IMG/VR virus record: IMGVR_UViG_3300017917_003822
Location: 1-64,000 of that record
DNA: 64,000 nt
Reading direction: 5' to 3' (one strand)
Below are positions 1-35,199 of this stretch, in pieces. Within the stretch, counting starts at the first letter, position 1; each line of letters begins with the position of its first letter. The notes under the pieces are model-generated. The model worked only from the letters and a program-made list of their open reading frames with translations. It was not told the DNA's origin and did no database searches. The translations under genes and the position numbers were made by a program.

Positions 1-1704
1 AGTGGTTCATCAGGAACTAGCGGGTCATCAGGAACTTCAGGAACAAGAGGATCCTCTGGATCTAGTGGTTCAAGCGGTTCATCAGGATCTAGTGGTTCAT
101 CAGGAACTAGTGGAGTTAATGGAACACCGGGATCTAGTGGTTCGTCAGGAACAAGTGGAACAAGTGGAGTTAATGGAACACCAGGAACCCCAGGATCTAG
201 TGGTTCATCAGGAACTAGTGGAGCTAACGGAACCCCAGGATCTAGTGGTTCATCAGGAACAAGTGGAACTAGTGGAGCTAACGGAACCCCAGGATCACCA
301 GGAACCCCAGGATCAAGTGGTTCGTCAGGAACTAGTGGAGTTAACGGAACCCCAGGAACACCAGGATCAAGTGGTTCGTCAGGATCTAGTGGGACATCTG
401 GACCTTCTACTAATATAAATGCCACAAACACAACAACTAACACCACATATTATCCGGTTTTTGTTACTGGTGCTGGTGGATCTACTCCTTGGATTAGAAC
501 AACTGCTAATGCATTTACATTTAATGCAGGCACTAATGTACTAACTGCAGACTCTATAACTGCAAATACCCGAATGGATGCTCCTATTTACTATGATTCT
601 AATAATACACTGTATTATGTGAACCCGGCAAGTACATCCAGACTGGATATATTGGAGGTAAATAAAACCATAGATGCTGTTACCTCAGTAACAGCCCCTA
701 TTTTCTTTGACAGAGATAATACCACATATTATGCTAATCCTGCAAGTACATCCAGATTATATGCGATAGATGTGGTAGACCTACTTAGTGTTGCTGCTGG
801 TACTATTCAGGGTAGATTCCACGTTTTCCAATATACTAATTTAGGTGGAACTGCTGGTAATAGCTTAATCCTACAGACCCTTGAAAACACTGGAGGATCT
901 GGGGGTAACAGAGTATTTATAAAAGATTATGCTTTTAGAGACGCTACGGGAACATCTTGGACAACTTGGAGACACCACAACTCCATTGATGTTGACGGGG
1001 TTTATAATACCCCTGGAACCAATACTAGAACATTCTGGGAAAGAGATCCTCTTAGCCAGGTACACTATTTTGGATCTAGCGCAAGCTACACTCTGACGAT
1101 AGACTCTGCAAATAACGTTGTTATTGCAAATAACATAGAAGTACAGGCTAATTCATCAGGTATTTACAGCGATGGTGGAGATTTAGCTGTAGGTGATTTT
1201 AATGGAAATGGTTACGGTGTTTCCCTTTATGCTAACGGTAATCAAAACTTCTCGGTGGCTGAGACTGTTATATATGCATACCAACCTTTAGCATACTATA
1301 ATCTTATTGGTACTGGTACTGTAAATGGTGAGATTGCATACTGGGGCGGGGGATCTGTAACAGCGGGACAATTATATTACTATAACTCTTCCGGTAACTG
1401 GGTTGATGCGGATGCAGATGCAGCTTCCACCGCAACAGGTTTACTAGCAATTGCTAGAAGTACAGGTACAGCATCTAACGTGGGAATGCTTTTAAGGGGG
1501 CATGCAAGATTCACTGCAAATTCAAATTACACGGCTCTTACAACAGTGGGTGCTCCTCTTTACATTTCAACAACCGCTGGAGGATTCTCACAAACCGCAC
1601 CAAACGGAACTGGTGATATTGTAAGGATTATCGGTTATGTCCAAAGTACAGCAAACGATCAGATCTATTTCTGTCCGGATACGACTTGGATTGAACTGGT
1701 ATAA
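1..1704 (+). CDS. Tail fibre-like protein with Ser/Thr-rich collagen-like (Gly-X-Y) stalk; 5'-truncated by the window edge
   Basis: Frame 1 is open from base 1 into the listed 574..1704 ORF. It has 45 uninterrupted Gly-X-Y triplets (4..408), a duplicated APIxxDxxNTxYYxNPASTSRL motif and a C-terminal beta-rich domain ending IYFCPDTTWIELV. Confidence 0.8.
   Translation, partial: SGSSGTSGSSGTSGTRGSSGSSGSSGSSGSSGSSGTSGVNGTPGSSGSSGTSGTSGVNGTPGTPGSSGSSGTSGANGTPGSSGSSGTSGTSGANGTPGSPGTPGSSGSSGTSGVNGTPGTPGSSGSSGSSGTSGPSTNINATNTTTNTTYYPVFVTGAGGSTPWIRTTANAFTFNAGTNVLTADSITANTRMDAPIYYDSNNTLYYVNPASTSRLDILEVNKTIDAVTSVTAPIFFDRDNTTYYANPASTSRLYAIDVVDLLSVAAGTIQGRFHVFQYTNLGGTAGNSLILQTLENTGGSGGNRVFIKDYAFRDATGTSWTTWRHHNSIDVDGVYNTPGTNTRTFWERDPLSQVHYFGSSASYTLTIDSANNVVIANNIEVQANSSGIYSDGGDLAVGDFNGNGYGVSLYANGNQNFSVAETVIYAYQPLAYYNLIGTGTVNGEIAYWGGGSVTAGQLYYYNSSGNWVDADADAASTATGLLAIARSTGTASNVGMLLRGHARFTANSNYTALTTVGAPLYISTTAGGFSQTAPNGTGDIVRIIGYVQSTANDQIYFCPDTTWIELV
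4..408 (+). repeat. 9-nt-period coding repeat, 45 x Gly-X-Y (GSS, GTS, GTP, GVN, GAN)
   Basis: Direct translation of frame 1: a GGN codon every 9 nt from 4 to 400. Confidence 0.95.
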
Positions 1705-1721
1705 AAGATCAGAATAAAATT

Positions 1722-2288
1722 ATGTATTATTTAAATCAAAAACTGGTGTTTGAAGATGATATGATTTATTTTTTGAATAAATCAGGCAACAGACATGAGG
1801 TTATGATGAGTTGGGAAGACCCCTTAATGAAGGCCTCAGCGGATTTCATTTGTCAAAATGGCGGACATATATTGGAAATTGGATTTGGTATGGGCATTTC
1901 TGCAAACTACATTCAACAAAACCAAATACTTTCGCATACCATCATTGAGAGTCATCCCGATGTTATACCAAGAGCTTTAGCATGGGCAGAGAATAAACCG
2001 AATGCCACTATAGTTCAAGGAAACTGGTACGATGTCTTACAAAATCTTGGTGTCTATGATGGTATTTTTTATGATACTTATGGTGACGAGGATTTTAGAA
2101 AATTTCCTGCATCTGTGTTACAGTTAGGCAAACCTGGAACTCTGTTGACTTTTTGGAATCCATTCTCTGAGCCTTCGAATATATTTGGGTTTGATGATGC
2201 TGAATATGATGTACATAATGTAAATCCCCCAAAAAATTCATATTTTGAATTCGATAAATATTATTTACCTAAAATCATAATGAAATAA
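1722..2288 (+). CDS. Class I SAM-dependent methyltransferase, GAMT/Rmt2-like
   Basis: VMMSWEDPLM, motif I ILEIGFGMG, HTIIESHP, YDGIFYDTY. Confidence 0.8.
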   Translation: MYYLNQKLVFEDDMIYFLNKSGNRHEVMMSWEDPLMKASADFICQNGGHILEIGFGMGISANYIQQNQILSHTIIESHPDVIPRALAWAENKPNATIVQGNWYDVLQNLGVYDGIFYDTYGDEDFRKFPASVLQLGKPGTLLTFWNPFSEPSNIFGFDDAEYDVHNVNPPKNSYFEFDKYYLPKIIMK

Positions 2289-2974
2289 TGCCAACTACAA
2301 CAGTAAACGCAACATACCAGGGATATGTTAGAAGAAGAATAATTAACTATATTGATTGGATTCTTGATGTTCGTGATGGTTTAAGCGGAACTCCCGTTAC
2401 CATCACTACCAATACATCAACTTCTCTTGCTATTGAGACGACCGAGACTGTTACCAGGTTGGGTTCTGATGGAATTTGTTCGCGAACTTTTTTATATTTT
2501 GACCTATCCAGTGTTCCTGGAATAATAACAGGAGCAACTTTGAGTGTTTTTGGATTTACTCCAAGTATGTTAAATACTATAACTGTTAAAAGCACAGCTT
2601 GGTCAGGTAGCAATTCTCTGGTTGCTAATGATTTTAGTGCGATAGATTTCAGTACACCTTACAGTAGTTCTCTACTTAGTTGGAGTACGACGGGATATAA
2701 CGACTTCGTAATGAACAGTACAGCTGTTTCCGATATGGTTGCTAATGGATACCTTAATATTGCAGTGATAGAGGCAGATTATGATTATGGTAGTAATTAT
2801 CCACCATTCGGAACTAATAATCAAAATGGTGTTGAATTTTTGGATGCAACATCTCCCATTAAATTAACAGTAACTTACATTAGTATCGAGCCTCTAGGTT
2901 TATCCCCTCTATTAGTAAATAAAATAAATGGAACATCATTTAGTAATATTTCTAAGGTAATAGGTGCGGGATAA
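2288..2974 (+). CDS. Putative virion/fibre-associated beta-rich protein
   Basis: T/S-rich; RTFLYFDLSSVPGIITGATLSV resembles DNRLRE/CBM-like domains; lies in the fibre locus. Confidence 0.5.
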   Translation: MPTTTVNATYQGYVRRRIINYIDWILDVRDGLSGTPVTITTNTSTSLAIETTETVTRLGSDGICSRTFLYFDLSSVPGIITGATLSVFGFTPSMLNTITVKSTAWSGSNSLVANDFSAIDFSTPYSSSLLSWSTTGYNDFVMNSTAVSDMVANGYLNIAVIEADYDYGSNYPPFGTNNQNGVEFLDATSPIKLTVTYISIEPLGLSPLLVNKINGTSFSNISKVIGAG

Positions 2975-3005
2975 TAAAAAATAAATAACCATTTCTTGAT
3001 AAATT

Positions 3006-3419
3006 ATGCCACTACCAGCATCTGGACCATTAGGTTTATCTGACATAGCACTCGAATTAGGGCTTTCTCTTAGTAACGTATCTCTGAGAAGTATGTCAAA
3101 CACGGCTGGGTTCACTACTCCCGATGCTATAAGTGAATTTTACGGATATAGTGCGTACACACTCTATGCTCTTGCTTGGTCTGCGTACGGTCCATGTAGT
3201 TATGTTTATTATGATATTTACCTAAGTGGAGATGGTAAATATTACGTAACAAATGACGGAGGATCTACATTTTCTCTAATGTATAGTGTTGCTGAATTTT
3301 GGTATGAATATCTATATTATGATCCGAATTTCATGGCCGATGTGTTTAATGCATATAGTGTAAATACAACATCCACCGTGATAAATGATGATGGGATATT
3401 TTTAAACAATTGTTTTTAA
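3006..3419 (+). CDS. Small tail fibre-associated protein
   Basis: N-terminus MPLPASGPLGLSDIALELG...ISEFYGYS is typical of small phage fibre-tip proteins. Confidence 0.55.
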   Translation: MPLPASGPLGLSDIALELGLSLSNVSLRSMSNTAGFTTPDAISEFYGYSAYTLYALAWSAYGPCSYVYYDIYLSGDGKYYVTNDGGSTFSLMYSVAEFWYEYLYYDPNFMADVFNAYSVNTTSTVINDDGIFLNNCF

Positions 3420-3430
3420 TAATCAAACTC

Positions 3431-3742
3431 ATGATAGAAAAAATTAAGGAAATAACGATAGATGGGATGGGCACAGCTACTGAGATTTTTTATGAAACTA
3501 GTAGCAGAGGAGCTAAGGAAAATGAGATGCTTGTCTATTATCATCTAAGAGATGTGTCACAATCCACAGTGGCTTTTGATTCTAGAACGAATCAAAATGT
3601 GATTTTACCATATAAGATTGTAAAACGTCAAAGAATTGTGGTTGTTGGGGAAGATTTAATTATGTTAAATCTTGATCCTTTGCATGCCAGGGATATAGCG
3701 GTAAGAGAATCCGGAGTGGAATTAGACAGCGATAATAATTAA
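3431..3742 (+). CDS. Hypothetical protein
   Basis: ORF in operon context; ATG at 3431 preferred over 3410. Confidence 0.6.
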   Translation: MIEKIKEITIDGMGTATEIFYETSSRGAKENEMLVYYHLRDVSQSTVAFDSRTNQNVILPYKIVKRQRIVVVGEDLIMLNLDPLHARDIAVRESGVELDSDNN

Positions 3743-3806
3743 TCACCGAAACTTTTTTGAGTTTCTTTGATAGAGAAGTTGTAGATTTTAATCCAATCGT
3801 CGACAT

Positions 3807-4394
3807 ATGATTTTTAATCAACCCCATAACGACCCTCAAAATTATTACTGGTTTCCTTCAGGTTTTAGTAAAGATGAGCTTGATAGAATATACAGTGATG
3901 TAGCAGAGTTACCCTTTGATCTGGCTACAGTAACAAACGGTACCGATCAGGACGAACATAAAAAAATTAGAAGCTCGTCAATTAAATGGATTCCCAAGGA
4001 TACCAAATGGAACTGGTTATACACAAAATTAATGAATCAAGCCACCGAAGCAAATAATGCTCTCTGGAATTTCGATCTTCTATCAGCGCCTGAATTGATC
4101 CAATATACTGAATATTACGCCTCAGAGGACGGACATTATGATTGGCATCAGGATATTGGTGGAGGTCCAGCAAGTCACCGAAAAGTTTCCATAACTGTCC
4201 AATTATCATCACCTGATGAATACGAGGGAGGTGATCTCGAATTATGGCAGGGTGCATCGGCCATACAGACAGCTCATAGAGGTGCAGGTGTCGTCTTTAT
4301 ATTTCCTAGTTATATGATGCATAGGGTCACTAGAGTCACCAAAGGTACTCGTAGAAGTTTCGTCTTATGGGTTGGAGGATCACATTATAAATAA
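3807..4394 (+). CDS. 2OG-Fe(II) oxygenase (prolyl-hydroxylase/PKHD-like)
   Basis: HxD (YDWHQD), distal His and Arg (MMHRVTRVTKGTRRSFVLW), YEGGDLEL. Confidence 0.9.
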   Translation: MIFNQPHNDPQNYYWFPSGFSKDELDRIYSDVAELPFDLATVTNGTDQDEHKKIRSSSIKWIPKDTKWNWLYTKLMNQATEANNALWNFDLLSAPELIQYTEYYASEDGHYDWHQDIGGGPASHRKVSITVQLSSPDEYEGGDLELWQGASAIQTAHRGAGVVFIFPSYMMHRVTRVTKGTRRSFVLWVGGSHYK

Positions 4395-4399
4395 TAATT

Positions 4400-5605
4400 A
4401 TGATAACCTGTGGTATAGTATCAGTTTTGATAGGTAGAGAATTTTCATTAGACCCTCTGCTGAATTATTTTAATAGAGTAGAAATTCCATATGGGGTTTA
4501 TGCAAATCTATATTTAGTATTGGGTTGTGATAACGAATTTGAAAACATACTAAAAAATAAAATCGAGGGTTTAAAATTGGGTAGAAGATACCTAAATATT
4601 AACTTTATTCCTGGTAACTTAAGATCTAATCCTGATTGGAATTGGGTTGAATGGGAAACACTTAGTAGAATAGAAAAAAAAGAAGATAAACATAAATTTG
4701 CTCTGGAGAACATCGAGATCGGGCTAGAGGCGGCAAAAAATGAAACTTATATTCATTTTGTTGATGATGATACGATACCACCCAACAATGCTTTAGTTGA
4801 TCTATTGGAATCATATCGGAAGATTGATAATTGTGGAATAGCCAGCGGAATCTATTTTAATAAAACATGGGTTGAACCAACAATAGCCGTTAGTAAAATA
4901 GAGGCATCAAGAAGAATAGTAGCTAGTTTTGTAAAAGAAACTTGGAGAGGGTGTTCGATTGATGATTTAGCAATTGAAAATTATAAAGACGTAGGATTTG
5001 TGGGAAATGGATGTATGTTGGTCTCTGGTGAAGATTTAAAAAAAATACTTCCCCTGTCTGAATGGCGGGAGGAAGATGATGATATAGCTCCTCCTGATTT
5101 TATAATATGTAGAAGAATTAGAAGACTGGATAGGGTCATATCCATGGTGCCATCGGTTATAGCTGAGCATCTAGATGAATCCGGAAATCCTGTTGGTCTT
5201 ACTTTGGATTATCTGAGAAATGTAAAAAATTCGGAGGGTGAATTTAACTTTCTTGTTACCCATTACGATGAGTACCTAGATTATACTTCATTAAGTAAAC
5301 AGTATGATGAAATACTAGTTCTACATCATAGAGAAATTCATGATGAAATACCCAGTAAATTACTAGATATCGATAATATAAGAATTATAAGGAGAAGTAT
5401 CAAAGAAACCTGCGAAAGATATAAAAGATATAAAAACGTTGACGGAAACTCCATGAAATATGCAGTTTTAGAAGAGATGCACAATTTTGTGATAGATAAA
5501 TCGAATTATATTGCTTACCATTATGATTCTTTAACAAATACAATATTAAGAGTTCCTTTATTAGATAGCAGGAACTTGAAAAAATTATTAAATCAAAAAC
5601 CATGA
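4400..5605 (+). CDS. GT-A fold (GT2-like) glycosyltransferase
   Basis: YIHFVDDDTIPP DxD motif, VGFVGNGCMLV, PDFIICRR, AEHLD. Confidence 0.7.
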   Translation: MITCGIVSVLIGREFSLDPLLNYFNRVEIPYGVYANLYLVLGCDNEFENILKNKIEGLKLGRRYLNINFIPGNLRSNPDWNWVEWETLSRIEKKEDKHKFALENIEIGLEAAKNETYIHFVDDDTIPPNNALVDLLESYRKIDNCGIASGIYFNKTWVEPTIAVSKIEASRRIVASFVKETWRGCSIDDLAIENYKDVGFVGNGCMLVSGEDLKKILPLSEWREEDDDIAPPDFIICRRIRRLDRVISMVPSVIAEHLDESGNPVGLTLDYLRNVKNSEGEFNFLVTHYDEYLDYTSLSKQYDEILVLHHREIHDEIPSKLLDIDNIRIIRRSIKETCERYKRYKNVDGNSMKYAVLEEMHNFVIDKSNYIAYHYDSLTNTILRVPLLDSRNLKKLLNQKP

Positions 5606-5856
5606 GCGATCAAATAAAATTGTCTCCTGAGGAGATAGAAATAGCTAACCAATTTTATAATAAGAGAACCGAGTATTTAGTTAGGTTAGGTGAGATAAAG
5701 CTTGCCGAGATTACTAATAAAAAAATTGTAGAGGAGACTTATTTCAATTTAACTGAGCTGAATACAAGGGAAACTCAATTTATGGGAGATATGCGGGAAA
5801 GATATGGAGTCGGTTATATAGATTTAGTCGAGGGGTATTATATTAAGAAATCCTGA
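5602..5856 (+). CDS. Small coiled-coil protein (paralog of 6285..6560)
   Basis: C-terminal YGVGYIDLVEGYY matches YGNGKLDFQTGIF of 6285..6560. Confidence 0.65.
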   Translation: MSDQIKLSPEEIEIANQFYNKRTEYLVRLGEIKLAEITNKKIVEETYFNLTELNTRETQFMGDMRERYGVGYIDLVEGYYIKKS

Positions 5857-5882
5857 TATATAAATAAATAACCTCGAATAAT

Positions 5883-6206
5883 ATGACCTACACTTGGGAA
5901 ATAACTAACATAAAAACCGCGGATGTCGGAGATTTTCAGAATGCGGTAATCCAAACATATTGGATAAAAAAAGGAATAGACGAAAAGGGAAAGGTTGGTT
6001 TGTTCAATGGAGCAACCCCAATCCCAACCGAAACCCTCAATAATGAAAATTTCATTCCATATACTCAACTAACAGAAGAGATTGTATTAGGTTGGATTCG
6101 TAGCTATATTGATGAAACATACGAACAACATATAAACAACCAAATACAAAAGCAAATCGACGATCAGAATATAAAGAATCTCGATCTCCCATGGGCTTCA
6201 TCATAA
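5883..6206 (+). CDS. Conserved small phage protein, putative tail fibre assembly-associated
   Basis: TYTWEI...FIPYTQLTEEIVLGWI...LPW pattern; preceded by the late promoter motif. Confidence 0.6.
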   Translation: MTYTWEITNIKTADVGDFQNAVIQTYWIKKGIDEKGKVGLFNGATPIPTETLNNENFIPYTQLTEEIVLGWIRSYIDETYEQHINNQIQKQIDDQNIKNLDLPWASS

Positions 6207-6284
6207 TATATCGAACGTATTGAAATGAAATCTTTACAACGAAACTATTTTAAATAAATCCACTAAAAAATTAAAAATAAAATT

Positions 6285-6560
6285 ATGGAAGATAAGCCAT
6301 TTAAATTACCAGAGGATCTTCTGCTAGAAATCCAAGGTTTAAAAGATGAACTAACAGAAAATGTAGTTAGAATAGGAAAATTAAACGTTCAGAAAGCTTT
6401 TTATGAAAAAGATCTGAATATGATAAATCTTGAATTAGATGCTCTTTATGGGCAGGCCGAAGTTCTTTCCAAAAAAGAGGAGGATCTTCAGGCTAAAGTA
6501 GTTTCGCTTTACGGAAACGGAAAACTTGACTTTCAGACCGGGATTTTTACGAACGAATAA
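6285..6560 (+). CDS. Small coiled-coil protein (paralog of 5602..5856)
   Basis: Heptad pattern and shared C-terminal YGxGxxD motif. Confidence 0.65.
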   Translation: MEDKPFKLPEDLLLEIQGLKDELTENVVRIGKLNVQKAFYEKDLNMINLELDALYGQAEVLSKKEEDLQAKVVSLYGNGKLDFQTGIFTNE

Positions 6561-6575
6561 AAACAACATCCCGCT

Positions 6576-7541
6576 TTGAATAGCAGCATTAAAAAAATAT
6601 TATACATCACGCCTCATCTTTCCACTGGTGGACTTCCCCAGTATCTATGGAAAAAGATTGAGGCTTTTAATTCTTATTTTGATATTCATTGCGTTGAGTA
6701 TAGCTATTTAGGTGATGCTTATGTTGTCCAGAGAAATAGAATATCGAATCTTTTGGGAGAGAGGTTCATTCCTATACATGGTAACGGTGAGAAACTACTG
6801 GAAGTAATCTCTGACATAAATCCCGATATTATTCACTTCGAGGAGTTCTGTGAAAGCTTTGTTCCTGACGATGTTCTATCCAAAATATTTTCAAATACTA
6901 GAGACTACCTAATATGTGAAACATGCCACAGTTCAGTGACCGACGTGGAGAGCAAAATATACAGACCAGATATGCTTATAATGGTCTCTAAATGGATTGA
7001 TGATAAATTTAAAAAACTGGGAATACCCTCAAGAATACTTGAATATCCAATAGAAAACAAAATCCCTGATAAGTATCTAAGTATGGCTTATTTAGGTCTG
7101 GATCCCAATTTTAAACATGTTATAAATGTGGGACTTTTTACTCCAGGAAAGAATCAGTCAGAAATCTTTGAATATGCAAGGTTGTCGTTAAAGAATGGAC
7201 TTCCGATAAAATATCATTTCATTGGAAATACTGCTGATAACTTTAGAGATTATTGGGAACCTCTTCTTTCAGATGTTCCTGATAATTGCGTTATTTGGGG
7301 GGAAAGAAACGATGTGGATCTTTTTTATCAGGCTGCTGATATTTTTCTTTTCACCTCAAATTTTGAATTAAATCCGCTTTCTATAAAAGAGGCATTATCA
7401 TGGGGACTTCCCTCTTTTTTTAAAAGACTCCCAACTTATTTAGATACCTATGATAATAATTCTAACGTTTATTACCTAACTGAGAATATCGAGACAAATT
7501 TTTCTATAATTATAAATACACTCAATCAGGAATGGAGATAG
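6576..7541 (+). CDS. GT-B (GT4-like) glycosyltransferase
   Basis: PHLSTGGLPQY, NVGLFTPGKNQ, FYQAADIFLFTSNFELNPLSIKEAL (ExxxxxxxE). Confidence 0.85.
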   Translation: MNSSIKKILYITPHLSTGGLPQYLWKKIEAFNSYFDIHCVEYSYLGDAYVVQRNRISNLLGERFIPIHGNGEKLLEVISDINPDIIHFEEFCESFVPDDVLSKIFSNTRDYLICETCHSSVTDVESKIYRPDMLIMVSKWIDDKFKKLGIPSRILEYPIENKIPDKYLSMAYLGLDPNFKHVINVGLFTPGKNQSEIFEYARLSLKNGLPIKYHFIGNTADNFRDYWEPLLSDVPDNCVIWGERNDVDLFYQAADIFLFTSNFELNPLSIKEALSWGLPSFFKRLPTYLDTYDNNSNVYYLTENIETNFSIIINTLNQEWR

Positions 7542-8734
7542 GTGCAAGTTCTAGATTTATCTATGATGATATAAAAAAATCTGAAGGTGTTTATGTTGAA
7601 TTAAACGTGACCCCTCAGATTTATATGTCTTTTGACTATACTCCAAAAATAACAATCACCGGTAGACCGATCGGGGATAATCCGACTAAATATACAACCA
7701 TCATAAAGGATGGATCTGATGTCATCTATAATACCGAGATCCATGCTGGCATGTTTTCGAGCTCCTTCAGGAGAGGGGTTTTTGATTGCAGAATGGAGGT
7801 TTATGCTGATAATTTATTGATTAAGGAGTTTTCTTTATATGATTATCTTAGAAGCGGTAAAGTCTGTGTTTCTATTGATAGTGCTTCTTTGGGTGATACC
7901 ATAGCTTGGATTCCTTATATAGAGGAATTCAGAAAGGTTTATCAAGTTGAGAATCTGATCGTTACAACATTTTATAATGATCTTTTTGAAACCCAATACG
8001 ATCAAATTAAATTCATGCATCCCGGCTATCGTGAGTCAGGAATGGATGTTATCATCGGTATAGGTTGGTATCATGAGGATGATAGAAATATGCATAAAAT
8101 AGATCCGAGAACAATACCACTTCAGAAAGTTAGCAGCGATATTTTAGGATTGGATTACCTGGGAGAAATTAGACCTCAAATAAATAGGGATATAAAATCT
8201 AGACCCACTTCAAAAAAATATGTCTGTATTGCAACCGAATCCACTGCAGGTGCAAAGTACTGGCATTATCCCGGTGGATGGCAAAGACTTGTTAATCTTC
8301 TTAAGATGGTGGGATACGATGTCGTAGTTATACAGAAAGAAAAAAATACACTTTCTAGAGTTATCGACAAGAGCGGTGATATACCATTTTCGGATAGAAT
8401 CAGCGACCTTTTGCAATGTGAATTTTTCATCGGTCTAAGTTCCGGTTTATCTTGGCTTTCTTGGGGTCTTGGAATTCCCACGGTGGTCATTTCAGGATTT
8501 ACCGAACCGTATTTAGAATTCTCAGACAGATGTCTGAGAATAATAAACAGAAATGTTTGCCATGGATGCTTTACGAACCCGAAAAATAAATTTGATAGAG
8601 GTGATTGGTGGTGGTGTCCGGAGCACAAGGGAACTGAAAGATCCTTTGAATGTACACGCACTATAAAACCTGAGGATGTTTTTATCTCAATATTGGACTG
8701 GGTAGAATCTGATTATTCCTCAAGATGTAACTAA
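7532..8734 (+). CDS. Autotransporter-type protein O-heptosyltransferase (Aah/TibC-like)
   Basis: SLGDTIAW, KYW, FFIGLSSGLSWLSW, VVISGFT and the four-Cys iron finger CHGC...FDRGDWWWCPEHKG...FECTRTI. Confidence 0.85.
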   Translation: MEIGASSRFIYDDIKKSEGVYVELNVTPQIYMSFDYTPKITITGRPIGDNPTKYTTIIKDGSDVIYNTEIHAGMFSSSFRRGVFDCRMEVYADNLLIKEFSLYDYLRSGKVCVSIDSASLGDTIAWIPYIEEFRKVYQVENLIVTTFYNDLFETQYDQIKFMHPGYRESGMDVIIGIGWYHEDDRNMHKIDPRTIPLQKVSSDILGLDYLGEIRPQINRDIKSRPTSKKYVCIATESTAGAKYWHYPGGWQRLVNLLKMVGYDVVVIQKEKNTLSRVIDKSGDIPFSDRISDLLQCEFFIGLSSGLSWLSWGLGIPTVVISGFTEPYLEFSDRCLRIINRNVCHGCFTNPKNKFDRGDWWWCPEHKGTERSFECTRTIKPEDVFISILDWVESDYSSRCN

Positions 8735-8748
8735 CCTTTTTAATAGCG

Positions 8749-8756
8749 GATATATA
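8749..8756 (+). promoter_or_regulatory. Late promoter motif GATATATA (neck/terminase operon)
   Basis: Exact copies upstream of many structural genes; analogous to the T4 late promoter TATAAATA. Confidence 0.75.
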
Positions 8757-8775
8757 ATCAAAGTATCTAGCTATA

Positions 8776-11265
8776 ATGAATTTTTACCCAGAAGATAAAT
8801 TTCCTAAGAAAGGAACATCAGTTAAAAACGGGAACGGCGAACAGTATGATTTGTCGGATCCTAGATATAACTATCATGACGGTCTACAGAACACATCCAA
8901 GATAAAGGAATCGTCTACCGATAATATCTACTCCACTCCGGGTGCTGCTGAAGCAAGATCCCAACAAATAGGTTGTGGTGGATATCACGAGGTTGTTATT
9001 GACGGGAACACTTATTATAAACCTTGTTCGTCACCTTCTTATTACGAAACTAGAATGGAGCAACTGGAAAGTGCTCTTAATTTTACGTATATTGGTAGCT
9101 ATAGGGTACTAAGTTGGGATAAGCCATTTGAATATGTTACTAAGTTTAAAGGGTGGATAATAGATGCCCTAAATAGCAATAACACAGGGTCCAGACTGGA
9201 TGCCAACGACATAGCCATAGATTTCAGATATAGCATAGATGGAAAAACTTGGTCTCTTTGGACAAATGTTGGTACTGCTCTTGGTGGTCTTACCAATGAA
9301 TTCTCTGATATTTTTGAAATTGATCTTGATCCCTCCAACAAATTCTATCCCGAATTTAGATTTACATCGGTCCTGATCAATGATGACGGTACAATAATTT
9401 ATAACACCAATGAACCCATAGATCCTTCAATAGTCATAGTAAGCTTTGAACTTGATTTAGATTATGCGCCAGCACCTGAGGTTGTTATTTATAAACCAGC
9501 CCCGATATGTTCTAATGAGATATCAAATAGACCCGTAGTTTTCTCTGATTGTAAATTTACATTTAATCCCTATGCTGTAAATAGAGCTTTGAATTTATAT
9601 CAGGATCTAAGTTTGATGGTTAATAATATCTTCGGATTAGAAGCAAATTATTACTCAGTTCAACCACAAGCTAGAGGAAAGGATGTTATATTAAGAGAAT
9701 ATACGATTTTTAATGTAGTTGATGAGAAATGTGTAAAAGTTCTTGTCCCACAAAATCAGTTTCCTGACAATAAGATCAACTTCGATCCTTTTGGACTTCA
9801 ATTCGAGGAACCTTTTGAAATTCAGATTGATAAGAAGTATTTCGAGGGTATTTTTGGTAAAGGTTCTCAACCAAGAAAAAGAGACATTTTATACTTCCCG
9901 CTAACAAATAGAATCTATGAAATAAATTCAACTTATTTATTTAGAGATTTTATGAACGCTCCGGTTTATTTTAAAATCGAGCTTAAAAAATACAGTCCAA
10001 AAAGTAACACGTATTTTCAAGATCCAGCTTATAAAGAGGAGCTTGATGGCATTACTCTGACGACCGAGAGTCTATTTGGTGAGGAGACAAAAGCGGAAGA
10101 ACTTAAAGTTTCCAAACCTCAGCAATATGCAACTACAATAACCCAGATGTCTCAGGATCCTATTAGATCCTATGTTTATAAGGACCTTGCCATAATAGGT
10201 TATGATTTAAATAACAATTGGACTATAGTTCTGAATAATTATTATGACCTATCGGATGCTTTTGCTGACAATTCTGAATTTGGTTACGATCCGAGGAGGT
10301 ATAGAAATGCTATTAGATATAAAGTTTTACCTGAACTTGGTTCTAAGGGTGAATTAGCCTACACCTGCTGGTTTAGTTTGAGAGATTATTATGATAATCA
10401 GCAGATGTTAAAAAGACCATATCCCATATTGAATCTTACTCTAGAATCGTTTGATTCGGAACATCTTCACTTTAATAGTTATCCGAAAAGACATAGATTG
10501 TCACAGTGGGAATCTTATGCTTCAAATCCTGAAGGATATGTCTCTATACAGGGTGACAAGTTGCATTCTGGTGGGTATGAAGTTTTAGGTGTTATTGACG
10601 AGTATAGATTCATAGTTAAAAATAACTCAATGAATTTTGCTGAAGGTACGATCATCTGGAAAATGCAGAAGGCTCAAAGTAGAAATCTGATAAGTGGTCT
10701 GTATGAATCCGAAGATGGAGACATTAAGGGAATTAGAATAGATCTGATACACTCGGGGGTTACTGATGAATCTACAAATCCATTTCTTGGACAGGGAAGT
10801 TTAGTTATTAGACTCAATGATAAAATCATAAACTCACCGATTCAATTTACACCAGAGTATGGAAGCTGGTATGGTGTAGTAATAAACGTTTCAAATGTAT
10901 ATAAGCAAATAGCAGCCAATATTTGGGAGATGTCATATGATCCAACTAATCCTAACGATCAGTCGAGTAAACTTAATAAGGTTCACGAGGAAGTTAGAAT
11001 GTTTACAGATCCGATAACATTTAAAGCACCTTCTGATGTTGTTAGTGATACTGCCAGTCCTTATTATGGAACTGATAATAACTCTTATAAGATATACACT
11101 GGACCTATATACTTGAGTAATGTTAGATTATTCAAAAATATGATAGATATAGACAATCAATCAATAGTTCTGAACCAAAACATAGTGAGAGATGCACAGC
11201 TCGCTCACATTATTGACAACGCCAAGCCTCTATTAAACATGCCTAAGTTTGCAAGAAATAGATAA
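8776..11265 (+). CDS. Enlarged neck/head-closure protein (T4 gp14-like core)
   Basis: Central FGLQFEEPFEIQIDKKYF...PRKRDILYFPLTNRIYEI resembles gp14; lies upstream of the terminase genes. Confidence 0.6.
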   Translation: MNFYPEDKFPKKGTSVKNGNGEQYDLSDPRYNYHDGLQNTSKIKESSTDNIYSTPGAAEARSQQIGCGGYHEVVIDGNTYYKPCSSPSYYETRMEQLESALNFTYIGSYRVLSWDKPFEYVTKFKGWIIDALNSNNTGSRLDANDIAIDFRYSIDGKTWSLWTNVGTALGGLTNEFSDIFEIDLDPSNKFYPEFRFTSVLINDDGTIIYNTNEPIDPSIVIVSFELDLDYAPAPEVVIYKPAPICSNEISNRPVVFSDCKFTFNPYAVNRALNLYQDLSLMVNNIFGLEANYYSVQPQARGKDVILREYTIFNVVDEKCVKVLVPQNQFPDNKINFDPFGLQFEEPFEIQIDKKYFEGIFGKGSQPRKRDILYFPLTNRIYEINSTYLFRDFMNAPVYFKIELKKYSPKSNTYFQDPAYKEELDGITLTTESLFGEETKAEELKVSKPQQYATTITQMSQDPIRSYVYKDLAIIGYDLNNNWTIVLNNYYDLSDAFADNSEFGYDPRRYRNAIRYKVLPELGSKGELAYTCWFSLRDYYDNQQMLKRPYPILNLTLESFDSEHLHFNSYPKRHRLSQWESYASNPEGYVSIQGDKLHSGGYEVLGVIDEYRFIVKNNSMNFAEGTIIWKMQKAQSRNLISGLYESEDGDIKGIRIDLIHSGVTDESTNPFLGQGSLVIRLNDKIINSPIQFTPEYGSWYGVVINVSNVYKQIAANIWEMSYDPTNPNDQSSKLNKVHEEVRMFTDPITFKAPSDVVSDTASPYYGTDNNSYKIYTGPIYLSNVRLFKNMIDIDNQSIVLNQNIVRDAQLAHIIDNAKPLLNMPKFARNR

Positions 11266-21427: not shown

Positions 21428-21435
21428 TACATTTG
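21428..21435 (+). promoter_or_regulatory. Bacteroidota-type housekeeping promoter -7 element (TACATTTG)
   Basis: Matches TAnnTTTG; same element at 35230 and 54658, variant at 41715. Confidence 0.65.
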
Positions 21436-21446
21436 TGGATAATCAA

Positions 21447-22037
21447 ATGGAAGAGAGCTTTATGATACAAACCTACGAAGAATACCCAGATCTGTCATTC
21501 ATGACTGACGAATTTATATCCCTTCCGTTCTGGAGAGTTAGAAAAAAAGAAAATGGGACTTTCGAGGTTTCCAGCTTTCCAAAAAAAATTAAAAATTTAA
21601 ATATAGGTATCGAAAATAGAGATACCATATATTTAGAGATGGCATCTGTTTGGTCCAAGAATTCATATTGTAGTCGAATGAAGGTGGGATGTCTTATAGT
21701 TAAGAACAAATCCATCATATCTGACGGATACAATGGTTCTCCAACCGGATTCCCAAATATTTGTGAAAGTGAAGATAATGTAACCTTACCATACGTTCTC
21801 CATGCGGAGGCAAATGCAATCACTAAGTTGGCAAAGGGAACCCAGAGTTCCGATGGATCTACTCTCTATGTAACTCTGTCCCCGTGCTTTGAGTGCTCAA
21901 AACTAATAATACAATCCGGTATAAAAAGAGTTATTTTTTCTGAGGTTTACAGAAAACCTGAATCCCTGTCTTTCCTGGTCGAGGGAGGAGTAGAAATTAT
22001 AAGATTCTCGAATAACCAAGATAAAACCCAAATTTAA
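21447..22037 (+). CDS. dCMP deaminase
   Basis: HAEANAI and SPCFEC zinc motifs, DGYNG. The GTG at 21435 overlaps the promoter, so ATG 21447 or 21462 is preferred. Confidence 0.92.
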   Translation: MEESFMIQTYEEYPDLSFMTDEFISLPFWRVRKKENGTFEVSSFPKKIKNLNIGIENRDTIYLEMASVWSKNSYCSRMKVGCLIVKNKSIISDGYNGSPTGFPNICESEDNVTLPYVLHAEANAITKLAKGTQSSDGSTLYVTLSPCFECSKLIIQSGIKRVIFSEVYRKPESLSFLVEGGVEIIRFSNNQDKTQI

Positions 22038-29486: not shown

Positions 29487-29846
29487 ATGACAAAAATTTA
29501 TGTAAAGAATAGCGAGCTCATGGCAGCAGTTATAGAATCAAAGAATGCTGGAAAATTAACACCTGAGACCATAGAGATGTTCAATCTTATGATAGAGGGA
29601 ATATCTAAAAAAATGTCATATAAGGATCCTGAGGATAAAGAGGATTGCATGGCTTTTGCTATGGAGGACTTATGTAAATATTGGAATAGATTCAATCCTG
29701 AAAAATCAAACAATCCGTTTGCGTATTTCACTCAGATTGCAAAGAATGGTTTTGCTAAAGGTTGGAAAAAACTACATCCGCCAAAAAATCCTAAAACTAT
29801 ACCCTTTAGTTATATTACAGGGGAGGATAACTCATATAACGTATAA
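29487..29846 (+). CDS. gp55: Late-transcription sigma factor (T4 gp55-like)
   Basis: YVKNSEL, FNPEKSNNPFAYFTQIAKNGF. Confidence 0.88.
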   Translation: MTKIYVKNSELMAAVIESKNAGKLTPETIEMFNLMIEGISKKMSYKDPEDKEDCMAFAMEDLCKYWNRFNPEKSNNPFAYFTQIAKNGFAKGWKKLHPPKNPKTIPFSYITGEDNSYNV

Positions 29847-29855
29847 TTATTGATT

Positions 29856-34224: not shown

Positions 34225-35199
34225 ATGAAATTTGATTTTTCAAGATTATTTTCTAAAAGTAAAATACTCGTAATTGGCGATGTTATGCTGGATCATTATG
34301 TTCTTGGTTCAGTTTCGAGAATTTCGCCAGAAGCACCAGTTCCTGTTCTAGTTAGGGAATCTGAGAGTCATTATTTGGGTGGTGCAGGTAACGTTTTTTC
34401 TAATATACATTCTCTAGGTGGGAATGGTGATATAATTTCCGTGATTGGAGACGATTTTAATGGTGAATATATCGAGAAAATGATTTTTGATAAATCCACA
34501 TTAAGTGTTCTTATTAAGGATAAAACAAGAAAAACCACCATAAAATCCAGATACATCGGAAATTCTCATCAATTACTTAGGGTTGATGACGAGGATTGTC
34601 TGGACATTAATCAGGAAATCCAATTACATTTTATGGAGAGACTTAATGCAATCATAGACTTCTACGATTGTGTTATTATGGAAGATTATAATAAGGGACT
34701 TTTAACCCCCGAAATAATAAAAAATGTTGTTAATCTATGTAGATCGAAGGGAAAGAAACTTATAGTTGATCCTAAAATAAGAAACGTTGATTTCTATAAG
34801 GGTTGCTCCGTTCTTAAACCTAATTTTTCGGAATTTTGTATTCTTGCAAATAAGAAGATGAACGTTTCAGATTTTGATTTAATAATAGAGGAGGCCAGAA
34901 AGATTATAAAAAAAATGGATCTCGAGTCTATCTTGGTAACTTTGTCTGATTCTGGAATCCTCTATGTTAGCAAATACGAATCGTACCACAGTCCGGGTTA
35001 TCCAATAAAAGTATCCGATGTTTCCGGAGCTGGCGACACAGTCACCGCTATGTTCTCCCTGTGCTGGTCGTCCGGTGTCGATTTAAAAGAGACTTTGGAT
35101 CTTTGCAATGTAGCAGGATCTATAGCTTGTTCGTTTGTTGGTGCTGTTTCCGTAAACATAGAAGATGTAATTAACAGCGAACATCTAAAAAATCTGTAG
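34225..35199 (+). CDS. rfaE1: D-glycero-D-manno-heptose-7-phosphate kinase (HldE/RfaE domain I, PfkB family)
   Basis: VIGDVMLDHY, RISPEAPVPV, GGAGNV, LLRVD, DYNKG, VDPK, DVSGAGDT. Confidence 0.92.
   Translation: MKFDFSRLFSKSKILVIGDVMLDHYVLGSVSRISPEAPVPVLVRESESHYLGGAGNVFSNIHSLGGNGDIISVIGDDFNGEYIEKMIFDKSTLSVLIKDKTRKTTIKSRYIGNSHQLLRVDDEDCLDINQEIQLHFMERLNAIIDFYDCVIMEDYNKGLLTPEIIKNVVNLCRSKGKKLIVDPKIRNVDFYKGCSVLKPNFSEFCILANKKMNVSDFDLIIEEARKIIKKMDLESILVTLSDSGILYVSKYESYHSPGYPIKVSDVSGAGDTVTAMFSLCWSSGVDLKETLDLCNVAGSIACSFVGAVSVNIEDVINSEHLKNL

What the first reader, a model, noticed from the sequence alone, without database searches (positions are those of the whole stretch)
1..8734. Candidate phage-encoded virion protein O-heptosylation and modification system
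Seen: within 8.7 kb there is a fibre gene with 45 Gly-X-Y triplets whose X/Y positions are mostly Ser/Thr, a SAM methyltransferase, a 2OG-Fe(II) hydroxylase, GT2, GT4 and an enzyme with the Aah/TibC signature (SLGD.IAW, GLSSGLSW, four-Cys iron finger). An HldE-type heptose kinase is encoded at 34225. Known: Aah/TibC transfer heptose from ADP-heptose onto serines of repetitive autotransporter adhesins, and HldE kinase catalyses a step of ADP-heptose synthesis. Inference: the phage contributes to its own nucleotide-heptose supply and glycosylates its fibres or virion, with the other enzymes extending or capping the glycan. This would be a phage analogue of giant-virus fibril glycosylation.
Basis: partly seen in the sequence, partly recalled or inferred. 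Interest (0 to 1): 0.88.

Follow-up and report, generated by a model that had tools for sequence, protein, structure and literature searches.

The report
Phage fibre sugar-coating gene module
A very large environmental phage carries, next to a collagen-like fibre gene, a close structural relative of the bacterial enzymes that attach heptose sugars to adhesins, and the same pairing recurs in hundreds of phages and some bacteria, which points to a so far undescribed way of sugar-coating virus fibres.

Summary
Window 1-1704 is the 3' part of a fibre gene with 45 unbroken Gly-X-Y triplets, 77% Ser/Thr at X/Y. Gene 7532-8734 is a real TibC/Aah-type protein O-heptosyltransferase: NCBIfam TIGR04414 scores 255 bits (cut-off 200), PDB TibC E 1e-50, model TM 0.81-0.86, and the catalytic Asp, four sugar-binding residues and four iron cysteines are all kept. 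It does not group with LPS heptosyltransferases. Gene 34225-35199 is a heptose-7-phosphate kinase. The methyltransferase, 2OG oxygenase and GT4 are confirmed. The 'GT2' is supported only as a GT-A fold.

Comparative work added three things.
- At least 574 IMG/VR contigs carry this enzyme, usually with a GT4 partner and a collagen-like fibre within 10 kb.
- The family tree splits into an autotransporter-linked clade and a sister clade. The sister clade holds all phage enzymes and the bacterial enzymes that sit beside (Gly-Ser/Thr-Ser/Thr)n lipoproteins, and it has a shortened 'thumb'.
- The genes between fibre and GT4 are a hypervariable tailoring cassette.

Only the kinase step of ADP-heptose synthesis is encoded in the 74 kb I could read. 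Glycosylation of the fibre is inferred, not shown. I rate it a new variant of a known kind.

The parts
1..1704 (+). 3' part of a collagen-like fibre gene, cut by the contig end. Bases 4-408 encode 45 G-X-Y triplets with 77% Ser/Thr and 9 Pro at Y. A 430-aa Thr/Ala/Gly/Asn-rich non-collagen C-terminal domain follows. This is the proposed acceptor.
   Evidence: translation, triplet counts; PHROG tail-fibre families, E 3e-23; window starts at contig position 1; only GXY ORF in the window.
1722..2288 (+). SAM-dependent methyltransferase, guanidinoacetate-N-methyltransferase-like. Part of the variable tailoring cassette.
   Evidence: PDB GAMT, E 5e-18; precomputed PF27704; weak PF13649. Homologues lie next to fibres in L133, L166 and L169.
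2288..2974 (+). ORF of 228 aa, Ser/Thr-rich, with no family match. Specific to this phage's cassette.
   Evidence: no hits; absent from close relatives; one weak homologue in L166.
3006..3419 (+). ORF of 137 aa, unknown function, specific to this cassette.
3431..3742 (+). ORF of 103 aa, unknown function, specific to this cassette.
3807..4394 (+). 2OG-Fe(II) oxygenase of the prolyl-hydroxylase-type (PKHD) family. Proposed hydroxylase of the Y-position prolines of the fibre.
   Evidence: PF13640, E 1.6e-13; phrog_61; PiuC. Its homologue is present only in loci whose fibres carry Y-position Pro.
4400..5605 (+). GT-A fold glycosyltransferase with an invariant DDD (DXD) motif, 'GT2-like'. Part of the variable cassette.
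   Evidence: invariant H119-F-x-D122-D-D-T; model pLDDT 84; GT-A hits at E 2e-10; two homologues named GT2-like by JGI. No Pfam or PDB sequence hit.
5602..5856 (+). Small ORF of 84 aa that resembles orf91 by eye. Unknown function.
   Evidence: weak homologue next to the TibC-like gene in L143/L146.
5883..6206 (+). DUF7936 protein of 107 aa.
   Evidence: precomputed PF25590.
6285..6560 (+). Small protein of 91 aa, rich in Leu, Glu and Lys, conserved immediately upstream of GT4 throughout the phage clade. Unknown role, possibly an adaptor or chaperone.
   Evidence: present at 36-81% identity in essentially all clade loci that show a GT4.
6576..7541 (+). GT4 (GT-B) glycosyltransferase, the conserved partner of the heptosyltransferase. 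Its end overlaps the next gene by 10 bases.
   Evidence: PF00534, E 3.5e-9. Present in 67 of 72 viral loci with at least 2.5 kb upstream. Fused to the TibC-like domain in about 700-aa proteins (P0071, P0089, P0090, P0101, P0104, P0111) and in the 1226-aa protein of Mel-JY01.
7532..8734 (+). TibC/Aah-type iron-finger protein O-heptosyltransferase (BAHT family), sister-clade form with a shortened beta-hairpin thumb.
34225..35199 (+). [quoted passage not shown] A core gene of the clade, between the second portal paralogue and DNA ligase.

Best explanation
The region is a virion-fibre glycosylation module of a huge T4-like phage; the window is the first 64 kb of a 270-kb contig.

Proposed mechanism:
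1. In the host cytoplasm the TibC/Aah-type enzyme (7532-8734) transfers heptose from ADP-heptose onto Ser/Thr of the (Gly-Ser/Thr-Ser/Thr)n collagen-like part of the fibre (1-1704).
2. The conserved GT4 partner (6576-7541) adds the next sugar.
3. A lineage-specific cassette between fibre and GT4 tailors the glycan. In this phage the cassette holds a GT-A glycosyltransferase and a SAM methyltransferase.
4. The 2OG-Fe(II) oxygenase most likely hydroxylates the Y-position prolines of the collagen-like repeats.
5. The phage heptose-7-phosphate kinase (34225-35199) raises flux through the host ADP-heptose pathway.

Shown: the identity and intact active site of the enzymes; the gene linkage in phages and bacteria; the separate clade with a shortened thumb.
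Inferred: the acceptor, the donor sugar, the order of steps and the biological purpose. A variable glycan coat on a fibre could serve adsorption, protection or surface specificity.
For: Enzyme identity:
- TIGR04414 scores above its curated cut-off, and TibC structures match at E 1e-50.
- TibC D110, T226, K230, R286, W305 and C339/342/358/370 correspond to window D122, T238, K242, R289, W308 and C343/346/362/374. These are invariant or nearly so in 24 relatives.
- The model has pLDDT 86 and TM 0.81-0.86 to TibC, including the N-terminal beta-barrel, against 0.4-0.5 to WaaF/WaaC.

Linkage in phages:
- The core order orf91-GT4-TibC-neck-TerL-sheath is conserved.
- A GXY ORF lies within 10 kb in 47 of 80 viral loci, and 38 of those have at least 60% Ser/Thr. 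None occurs in 17 control loci covering 283 kb.
- The fibre sits on either side and either strand of the enzyme gene.
- The cultured Microcystis phage Mel-JY01 has an 805-aa GTS/GSS fibre followed by a GT4-TibC fusion protein.

Linkage in bacteria:
- All 13 bacterial enzymes with a (G-S/T-S/T)n ORF 107-982 bp away fall in the same 100%-supported clade as the phage enzymes.
- None of the 58 members of the other clade has such a neighbour, and 5 of 6 tested there have an AIDA-type autotransporter gene downstream.

Heptose as the sugar:
- All four sugar-binding residues are conserved.
- The heptose kinase is syntenic in 16 related contigs and shares a contig with the TibC-like gene in 7.
- Other TibC-bearing phages encode GmhA (LR756504), HldD plus a GT9 (L144), or the kinase (LR756501).

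Tailoring cassette: relatives carry sulfotransferases with APS kinase, DegT with an acetyltransferase, GT8/GT9/GT2 enzymes, or a CxxxCxxC-type (radical-SAM-like, by eye) protein at the same position.

2OG oxygenase: its presence goes with Y-position Pro in the fibre (p 7e-6; the loci are not independent).
Against: - There is no biochemical evidence for any step.
- TibC recognises a beta-helix strand-loop-strand motif through its iron finger and works as a dodecamer (PMC4358343). A collagen-like triple helix or an unfolded Gly-Ser repeat is a very different acceptor.
- The thumb needed for the dodecamer is 9-10 residues shorter here.
- Some relatives keep GT4 and the TibC-like gene next to fibres with only 12-24% Ser/Thr: GAQ type in L119-L121 and L131, GPQ type in L156.
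- In 33 of 80 viral loci no GXY ORF was seen. Several of these are cut short upstream of the enzyme gene, but not all.
- Only one pathway step, the kinase, is encoded in the 74 kb I could read, and its TIGR02198 score is just under the curated cut-off.
- The other 196 kb of the contig were not examined.
Confidence: 0.6

Rival explanations
1. The TibC-like enzyme and its partners glycosylate another virion protein rather than the collagen-like fibre. Candidates are the 829-aa neck protein just downstream, the capsid or the sheath. On this view the fibre is merely a neighbour in the structural module.
For: The TibC-like gene always lies directly upstream of the neck/terminase/sheath block in the window's clade. 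Some relatives have fibres poor in Ser/Thr. In mycobacteriophages the known glycosylated virion proteins are capsid and tail-tube subunits (my own knowledge of Freeman et al. 2023; the topic is mentioned in PMC11256854).
Against: In more distant phages the neck block is absent but the fibre is still adjacent, in either orientation (L147, L159-L165, L169, L180). The same holds in Mel-JY01. Bacterial members of the clade sit beside Gly-Ser/Thr repeat proteins with no phage genes around them.
Confidence: 0.15
2. The module modifies the host rather than the virion. For example it heptosylates host surface lipoproteins or adhesins, or remodels the envelope, to block superinfection or alter the cell during infection.
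For: Bacterial members of the clade appear to act on exported lipoproteins. Phage glycosyltransferases that convert host surface structures are well known (my own knowledge). The kinase could feed LPS core synthesis.
Against: The cassette shows none of the membrane-translocation proteins (flippase, polymerase, GtrA/B type) among its Pfam matches. The enzyme does not resemble LPS heptosyltransferases. The module is embedded in, and co-oriented with, the late structural genes. Its strongest conserved neighbour is a phage fibre that carries the same repeat type as the bacterial partners.
Confidence: 0.1
3. The enzyme has the TibC fold but has changed donor, transferring a hexose or another nucleotide sugar. 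The heptose kinase would then be unrelated to it.
For: The kinase is 26 kb away in a replication-gene neighbourhood. The position of TibC Pro300, which tunes heptose stereoselectivity, is Ser here and Gly in most of the clade. Cassette enzymes in relatives point to diverse sugars.
Against: All four sugar-binding residues and the catalytic Asp of TibC are conserved. Heptose-pathway genes of different steps recur in TibC-bearing phages. Ser at the Pro300 position is the Aah state, which accepts both ADP-heptose epimers (PMC4358343).
Confidence: 0.12

Closest known systems
Bacterial autotransporter heptosyltransferases (BAHT: TibC of ETEC, Aah of DAEC; NCBIfam TIGR04414; PDB 4rap/4rb4; PMC4358343)
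   Same: Same family by curated HMM. Same fold: N-terminal beta-barrel, GT-B catalytic core and 1Fe-0S iron finger. Same catalytic Asp, the same four sugar-binding residues and the same four iron cysteines. The presumed mode of action is also the same: cytoplasmic O-heptosylation of Ser in a highly repetitive structural protein encoded next door.
   Different: It belongs to a separate, well-supported sister clade. The beta-hairpin thumb that builds the TibC dodecamer is 4-10 residues shorter: 28-29 or 34 aa, against exactly 38 aa in all 58 autotransporter-linked members. The neighbouring repeat protein is a collagen-like fibre in phages, or a Gly-Ser/Thr repeat lipoprotein in bacteria, not an AIDA-type beta-helix autotransporter. 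It has a conserved, sometimes fused, GT4 partner and a variable tailoring cassette, which implies an oligosaccharide rather than single heptoses. It is encoded by a virus.
Mycobacteriophage virion glycosylation (phage-encoded glycosyltransferases modifying capsid and tail-tube subunits; my own knowledge of Freeman et al. 2023, referred to in PMC11256854)
   Same: Phage-encoded glycosyltransferases are placed in or near the structural genes and modify virion proteins in the cytoplasm before assembly.
   Different: The enzyme families, the sugar and the target differ. Here the target would be collagen-like fibre repeats rather than the C-terminal tails of capsid or tube proteins. The system here includes a nucleotide-sugar pathway gene and a hypervariable cassette.
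Giant-virus fibril and collagen modification (Mimivirus fibril glycans; the Mimivirus L230 collagen lysyl hydroxylase/glucosyltransferase; chlorovirus prolyl 4-hydroxylase), from my own knowledge
   Same: A virus encodes collagen-like proteins together with a 2OG-Fe(II) hydroxylase, glycosyltransferases and sugar-nucleotide enzymes, so it makes its own glycosylated fibres without host machinery.
   Different: The proposed linkage is Ser/Thr O-heptose made by a BAHT enzyme, not hydroxylysine-linked glucose. The host is a bacterium. None of the genes was shown to be orthologous.
O-glycosylated collagen-like exosporium glycoprotein BclA of Bacillus spores (my own knowledge)
   Same: A bacterial-world collagen-like G-X-T repeat region is heavily O-glycosylated on Thr, which shows that such repeats are workable acceptors.
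   Different: Different glycosyltransferases and sugars (rhamnose-based oligosaccharides). It is not viral.
LPS core heptosyltransferases WaaC/WaaF (GT9, PF01075)
   Same: Distantly related GT-B catalytic core that uses ADP-heptose.
   Different: PF01075 scores 16.6 bits, below its cut-off of 22. E. coli WaaC/WaaF gave no tblastn hit to the window. TM is only 0.4-0.5. They lack the beta-barrel and the iron finger, and their acceptor is a lipid-linked glycan.

Membership tests
BAHT / TibC-Aah protein O-heptosyltransferases (TIGR04414) | Scores above the curated family cut-off of the equivalog model | tested here: met
   255.2 bits against a cut-off of 200, E 9e-76, covering model positions 37-369 of 374.
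BAHT / TibC-Aah protein O-heptosyltransferases (TIGR04414) | Catalytic base Asp110 and sugar-binding Thr226, Lys230, Arg286, Trp305 (PMC4358343) | tested here: met
   They align to D122, T238, K242, R289 and W308. D, K and W are (near-)invariant, while T and R vary in a minority (T/S and R/I/T) across 94 family members. The residue list comes from the paper.
BAHT / TibC-Aah protein O-heptosyltransferases (TIGR04414) | 1Fe-0S iron finger: four cysteines (TibC C339, C342, C358, C370) | tested here: met
   C343, C346, C362 and C374 align and are invariant. Iron binding itself cannot be tested here.
BAHT / TibC-Aah protein O-heptosyltransferases (TIGR04414) | Protomer architecture: N-terminal flattened beta-barrel plus GT-B core | tested here: met
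   The AlphaFold model has pLDDT 85.9, with strands at 29-101 followed by the GT-B core. TM is 0.81-0.86 to all TibC chains over 380-395 columns.
BAHT / TibC-Aah protein O-heptosyltransferases (TIGR04414) | Beta-hairpin thumb (Phe265/Val266 tip) that mediates the ring dodecamer | tested here: not met
   The segment from window G261 to R289 is 28-29 aa, against 38 aa in all 58 autotransporter-linked members. The alignment shows a 9-residue gap over the TibC thumb, and the model shows no hairpin there. The oligomeric state itself cannot be tested with these tools.
BAHT / TibC-Aah protein O-heptosyltransferases (TIGR04414) | Acceptor is an AIDA/TibA-type autotransporter encoded next to the enzyme | tested here: not met
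   No autotransporter domain occurs in the window's genes. The neighbour is a collagen-like fibre. Control loci of the other clade do have AIDA/autotransporter genes downstream.
BAHT / TibC-Aah protein O-heptosyltransferases (TIGR04414) | Transfers heptose from ADP-heptose to protein Ser | not testable with these tools
   This needs an enzyme assay or mass spectrometry.
LPS heptosyltransferases (GT9, PF01075: WaaC/WaaF) | Pfam GT9 match above the gathering score, and closest structures are WaaC/WaaF | tested here: not met
   16.6 bits against a cut-off of 22. No tblastn hit with E. coli WaaC/WaaF. TM 0.37-0.52, against 0.81-0.86 to TibC.
Heptose-7-phosphate kinase (HldA / HldE domain I, TIGR02198) | Family model match and closest solved structure | tested here: inconclusive
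   314.6 bits, just under the curated 345, but 240 bits above the next family. The top PDB hit is HldA 4e84 at E 1e-49, against 1.5e-9 for ribokinase. It is 33% identical to the E. coli HldE N-domain. In practice it is a heptose kinase.
Bifunctional HldE | C-terminal adenylyltransferase (cytidylyltransferase-like) domain | tested here: not met
   The protein has 324 aa with only a PfkB domain. The E. coli HldE C-domain has no hit in window 1-74 kb.
Complete phage-encoded ADP-heptose pathway | gmhA, gmhB, hldC and hldD present | tested here: not met
   None was found in contig positions 1-73,904, by tblastn with the E. coli K-12 proteins or by precomputed Pfam. The remaining roughly 196 kb of the contig were not examined.
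Prolyl-4-hydroxylase-type 2OG-Fe(II) oxygenases (PF13640) | Pfam match above cut-off; a substrate with X-Pro-Gly sites | tested here: met
   51.8 bits against a cut-off of 27. The fibre has 9 G-X-P triplets, and Y-position Pro goes with presence of the gene in relatives. Hydroxylation itself was not tested.
GT2 glycosyltransferases (PF00535) | Pfam GT2 match; GT-A fold with DXD | tested here: inconclusive
   No Pfam match. The GT-A fold and an invariant DDD motif are supported. GT2 members are among the top structural hits (K4CP, hyaluronan synthases), but so are GT25-type collagen glycosyltransferases.

The most novel reading that the evidence does not exclude
The phage enzyme represents a distinct, thumb-shortened sister clade of the autotransporter heptosyltransferases, whose acceptor is a (Gly-Ser/Thr-Ser/Thr)n or collagen-like repeat. 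That would be a second, previously unrecognised class of protein O-heptosylation. Hundreds of environmental phages, many of them very large, would use it to build hypervariable glycans on virion fibres (methylated, sulfated or aminated, depending on the cassette). Gammaproteobacteria and methanotrophs would use it on small acidic lipoproteins.
Probability: 0.5. Interest if true: 0.82.

Novelty: new variant of a known kind. Interest (0 to 1): 0.72.

Why it matters
Protein O-heptosylation is so far known only for bacterial autotransporter adhesins. Virion glycosylation in phages is documented for only a few groups. If this module works as proposed, four things follow.

- Many environmental phages, including some of the largest known, would coat a collagen-like fibre with a glycan of their own making. 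The variable cassette suggests that this glycan is under diversifying pressure, as O-antigens are. That bears on adsorption, host range and particle stability in nature.
- It would define a new acceptor class for a structurally unusual enzyme family.
- It would explain why phages carry isolated ADP-heptose pathway genes.
- It would give a simple test system, because the fibre fragment and the enzyme can be co-expressed in E. coli K-12, which makes ADP-heptose.

Tried and rejected
- Megablast of window 1-9000 against 50,697 phage records found nothing. The nearest relatives were found only at protein level: huge uncultured phages LR756500-504.
- I first thought the viral loci were missing from the script sandbox. 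They were stored in multi-record files.
- Sequence searches of the 'GT2' protein against Pfam, NCBIfam, PHROGs and PDB gave nothing. Only fold comparison was informative.
- Translating the large upstream gene of L016 in frame 1 gave the wrong frame, and I did not pursue it. No GXY run was found in that locus.
- I did not walk the whole 270-kb contig for heptose genes, because each look-up adds only 10 kb. I stopped at 74 kb.
- Five literature searches for phage-encoded TibC/BAHT enzymes, collagen-like fibres with heptosyltransferases, or Mel-JY01 found no paper describing this system.
- I considered and rejected LPS heptosyltransferase. I also rejected DNA glycosylation, because nothing in fold, residues or context suggests it.
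- An lysogenic-conversion-type envelope modification is kept only as a low-probability rival.

Full report
**Where the window comes from.** The window is the first 64 kb of a 270,629-bp metagenomic contig, JGI Ga0192394_135162, also listed as IMGVR_UViG_3300017917_003822. It encodes T4-type portal, terminase, sheath, major capsid (Gp23) and neck proteins. At protein level its nearest relatives in a phage database are uncultured huge phages of 460-735 kb, LR756500-504. There is no nucleotide-level match. G+C content is about 35%, and nearly all genes are on the + strand.

**Check of the observation.**
- Fibre. Frame 1 of bases 1-1704 is one open reading frame cut by the contig end. Its residues 2-136 are 45 uninterrupted Gly-X-Y triplets. 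X is S20/T19/V3/A2/P1 and Y is S30/P9/N5/R1, so 77% of X/Y positions are Ser/Thr. It matches phage tail-fibre PHROGs through this region.
- Methyltransferase. 1722-2288 matches guanidinoacetate N-methyltransferase structures at E 5e-18.
- 2OG oxygenase. 3807-4394 is a PF13640 2OG-Fe(II) oxygenase. It resembles PKHD-type hydroxylases.
- 'GT2'. 4400-5605 has no sequence-level family match. It has an invariant HFVDDDT motif. Its model (pLDDT 84) matches GT-A glycosyltransferases: chondroitin polymerase K4CP, human collagen galactosyltransferase COLGALT1, the LH3 glycosyltransferase domain and hyaluronan synthases, at E about 1e-10 and TM about 0.4. 'Glycosyltransferase' is therefore supported, while 'GT2' is only a fold-level call.
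- GT4. 6576-7541 is a GT4.
- Heptosyltransferase. 7532-8734 overlaps the GT4 gene by 10 bases. It scores 255 bits on TIGR04414 (cut-off 200) and E 1e-50 against TibC structures.
- Kinase. 34225-35199 is a heptose-7-phosphate kinase. TIGR02198 scores 314.6 bits (cut-off 345). HldA structure 4e84 matches at E 1e-49, against 1.5e-9 for the next kinase family. It is 33% identical to the E. coli HldE N-domain.

**Is it really a TibC-type enzyme?** The structural paper on TibC (PMC4358343) names a catalytic base (Asp110), four sugar-binding residues (Thr226, Lys230, Arg286, Trp305) and four iron-binding cysteines (339, 342, 358, 370).
- In the pairwise alignment these correspond to D122, T238, K242, R289, W308 and C343/346/362/374 of the window protein. 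They are invariant or nearly so in 24 relatives and largely conserved in 94 family members.
- An AlphaFold model built on that alignment (pLDDT 85.9) superposes on every TibC chain at TM 0.81-0.86, including the N-terminal beta-barrel. WaaF and WaaC reach only 0.4-0.5.
- E. coli WaaC and WaaF find nothing in the window by tblastn.
[quoted passage not shown] That position is Ser in the window enzyme, as in Aah, which accepts both epimers.

**How common is it, and what sits next to it?**
- The protein has more than 2,100 relatives at E<1e-5 in the metagenomic protein collection. JGI's annotation names many of these 'autotransporter strand-loop-strand O-heptosyltransferase'.
- In a curated phage database only Microcystis phage Mel-JY01 and three huge uncultured phages have it.
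- In the window's own clade the order orf91-GT4-TibC-neck(829 aa)-orf260-terminase-sheath is conserved. GT4 and the TibC-like protein diverge faster (48-72% identity) than the neck and terminase proteins (76-95%).
- Everything between the fibre and orf91 is replaced from phage to phage:
  - methyltransferase, three unknown ORFs, 2OG oxygenase and a GT-A enzyme in the window;
  - two sulfotransferases, an FkbM-type methyltransferase and an APS kinase in L014 and L016;
  - several further, apparently paralogous ORFs of unassigned family and a CxxxCxxC-type protein in L007 (read by eye);
  - GT9, DegT aminotransferase, acetyltransferase and GT2 in L017.
- This looks like a glycan-tailoring cassette anchored by two constant enzymes.
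- GT4 accompanies the TibC-like gene in 67 of 72 viral loci with enough upstream sequence. It is fused to the TibC-like domain in about 700-aa proteins and in the 1226-aa protein of Mel-JY01. That is good evidence that the two enzymes act together.

**The likely acceptor in phages.**
- A Gly-X-Y ORF of at least 8 triplets lies within 10 kb of the TibC-like gene in 47 of 80 viral loci, and 38 of these have at least 60% Ser/Thr at X/Y.
- Several of the remaining loci are cut short upstream of the enzyme gene, and at least 17 of the 80 loci begin inside the fibre gene at a contig end, which suggests that the repeats break assemblies.
- No such ORF occurs in 17 control loci (283 kb) from the same kind of phages, nor elsewhere in the window.
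- The fibre can lie upstream on the same strand, or downstream on the opposite strand.
- In Mel-JY01 the 805-aa GTS/GSS fibre is on the + strand, just upstream of a Ser-rich structural protein and the GT4-TibC fusion. GenBank annotates two ORFs on the opposite strand there instead.

**Independent support from bacteria.** I built a tree of 94 enzymes: 14 phage and 80 bacterial.
- It splits with 100% SH-aLRT support into a 58-member clade and a 36-member clade.
- The 58-member clade has no Gly-Ser/Thr repeat neighbours. In 5 of 6 loci tested there, an AIDA-type autotransporter gene lies immediately downstream.
- The 36-member clade holds every phage enzyme and all 13 bacterial enzymes that have a (G-S/T-S/T)n ORF 107-982 bp away.
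- Those bacterial ORFs are mostly small lipoproteins with a lipobox, 15-26 GSS/GTS triplets and an acidic tail. They occur in Gammaproteobacteria and methanotrophs, in ordinary chromosomal surroundings.
- The two clades also differ structurally. The segment that forms TibC's beta-hairpin thumb, which is needed for the dodecameric ring, is exactly 38 residues in all 58 autotransporter-linked members. In the other clade it is 28-29 residues (23 members) or 34 residues (10 members). The model shows no hairpin there.
- The window enzyme is thus a family member by active site and fold. It fails two features tied to the autotransporter mode of action: the thumb and the acceptor type.

**Heptose supply.**
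- The kinase is a core gene of the clade. In 16 related contigs the order gp2, portal A, portal B, kinase, DNA ligase, clamp loader is the same.
- In 7 IMG/VR contigs the kinase and the TibC-like gene were both retrieved from the same contig.
- I found no gmhA, gmhB, hldC or hldD in contig positions 1-73,904. This rests on tblastn with the E. coli K-12 proteins and on precomputed Pfam annotation. About 196 kb of the contig remain unread.
- Other TibC-bearing phages carry other single steps:
  - GmhA, 66% identical to the E. coli protein, about 27 kb from the TibC-like gene in LR756504;
  - HldD, 42% identical to the E. coli protein, plus a GT8-GT9 fusion in L144;
  - the kinase in LR756501.
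- The best reading is that these phages reinforce single steps of a host pathway and do not encode it whole.

**The 2OG oxygenase.** It belongs to the prolyl-hydroxylase-type family. The fibre's prolines are almost all at the Y position, in G-T-P and G-S-P triplets. Y is the position hydroxylated in collagens (established knowledge). Among loci with a visible fibre, a homologue of this oxygenase is present where 3-20% of Y positions are Pro. It is absent where Y-position Pro is 0-3% (Mann-Whitney p 7e-6). The loci are not independent and some fibres are partial. I therefore assign it to fibre proline hydroxylation rather than glycan tailoring, with moderate confidence.

**Mechanism proposed.**
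- Shown: enzyme identities, conserved catalytic residues, gene linkage and the clade structure.
- Inferred: in the cytoplasm the TibC-like enzyme puts heptose on Ser/Thr of the fibre's Gly-Ser/Thr repeats, using ADP-heptose. GT4 extends the glycan. The cassette enzymes add or modify further residues. The oxygenase stabilises the collagen-like helix. The glycosylated fibre is then built into the virion.
- The fibre precedes the neck-protein gene, terminase and sheath, in a gene order that resembles the T4 late region. Whether it is a neck or a tail fibre is open.
- Rivals are listed with probabilities in the Rival explanations section: another virion protein as acceptor, a host target, or a changed donor sugar.

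**Novelty.** Five literature searches found no paper on phage-encoded TibC/Aah-type enzymes, nor on their link with collagen-like fibres. Automatic annotation already gives such genes the family name. The enzyme family, phage virion glycosylation in mycobacteriophages, and giant-virus fibril glycosylation are all known. I rate this a new variant of a known kind: the same catalytic machine in a distinct clade, with a different acceptor class, a fused or adjacent GT4 partner and a hypervariable tailoring cassette, widespread in environmental phages. Interest is 0.72.

Noticed in passing
window 30977-32572 and 32577-34202: Two tandem T4-type portal (gp20) genes, 52% identical to each other. Both are kept (each 78-94% identical to its counterpart) in 16 related viral contigs, always in the order gp2, portal A, portal B, heptose kinase, ligase. 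This is an old, maintained duplication that suggests a mixed portal ring or two portal roles.
   Followed up: partly
L012 (Microcystis phage Mel-JY01, PP395634.1) 635-3052, + strand: The GenBank record annotates two hypothetical proteins on the minus strand (1-651, 739-2298). On the plus strand, the same stretch encodes an 805-aa GTS/GSS collagen-like fibre. The 1226-aa 'methyltransferase FkbM' is in fact a GT4...TibC-type fusion protein.
   Followed up: yes
L013 8549-8923(-), 11205-11816(-), 12158-12619(-); also L018, L020-L024, L029, L052, L069, L071: Bacterial relatives of the enzyme are flanked by one to three small lipobox lipoproteins. Each is made of a (Gly-Ser/Thr-Ser/Thr)n run ending in a poly-Asp/Glu tail. 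This protein type had no Pfam hit on record in the one locus with precomputed annotation (L013).
   Followed up: partly
L014 3323-6731; L016 5839-8427: Relatives carry sulfotransferases plus an APS kinase, and in L016 a small cytidylyltransferase-like gene, in the cassette between fibre and GT4. This suggests sulfated glycans on phage fibres and phage-made PAPS.
   Followed up: no
window 6285-6560 and 5602-5856: orf91 is a small 91-aa protein (rich in Leu, Glu, Lys) conserved directly upstream of GT4 in the whole clade. orf84 looks like a diverged copy by eye. Function unknown.
   Followed up: partly
window 1; L003-L006, L009, L011, L117-L121 and others: Many related contigs begin or end inside or just beside the fibre gene. 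The collagen-like repeats evidently break metagenome assemblies, so full-length fibres are under-represented.
   Followed up: no
window 6576-8734 and 34225-35199 compared with their neighbours: GT4, the TibC-like enzyme and the heptose kinase are much more diverged between related phages (45-75% identity) than the adjacent neck, terminase, portal and ligase genes (69-95%). This hints at faster or diversifying evolution of the glycosylation genes.
   Followed up: no
LR756504.1 430086-430643: A 636-kb uncultured phage encodes a GmhA that is 66% identical to E. coli GmhA, which is unusually high for a phage copy and suggests a fairly recent capture from a bacterium.
   Followed up: no
L144 3765-4664: The HldD-like match (42% identity over 305 residues) runs beyond the end of the standard-code ORF (3765-4328), and ORFs in this viral locus look fragmented. 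Possible causes are stop-codon reassignment, frameshifts or sequencing errors.
   Followed up: no
window 21435-22037, 22041-22649, 29487-29846, 29850-30341, 37567-38097, 40758-41690, 55307-56713, 60814-61395: Other auxiliary genes in the window: dCMP deaminase, two sigma-70-type factor genes, a TnsA-like endonuclease just before gp2 and the portals, guanylate kinase, UvdE endonuclease, asparagine synthase and a NUDIX hydrolase.
   Followed up: no
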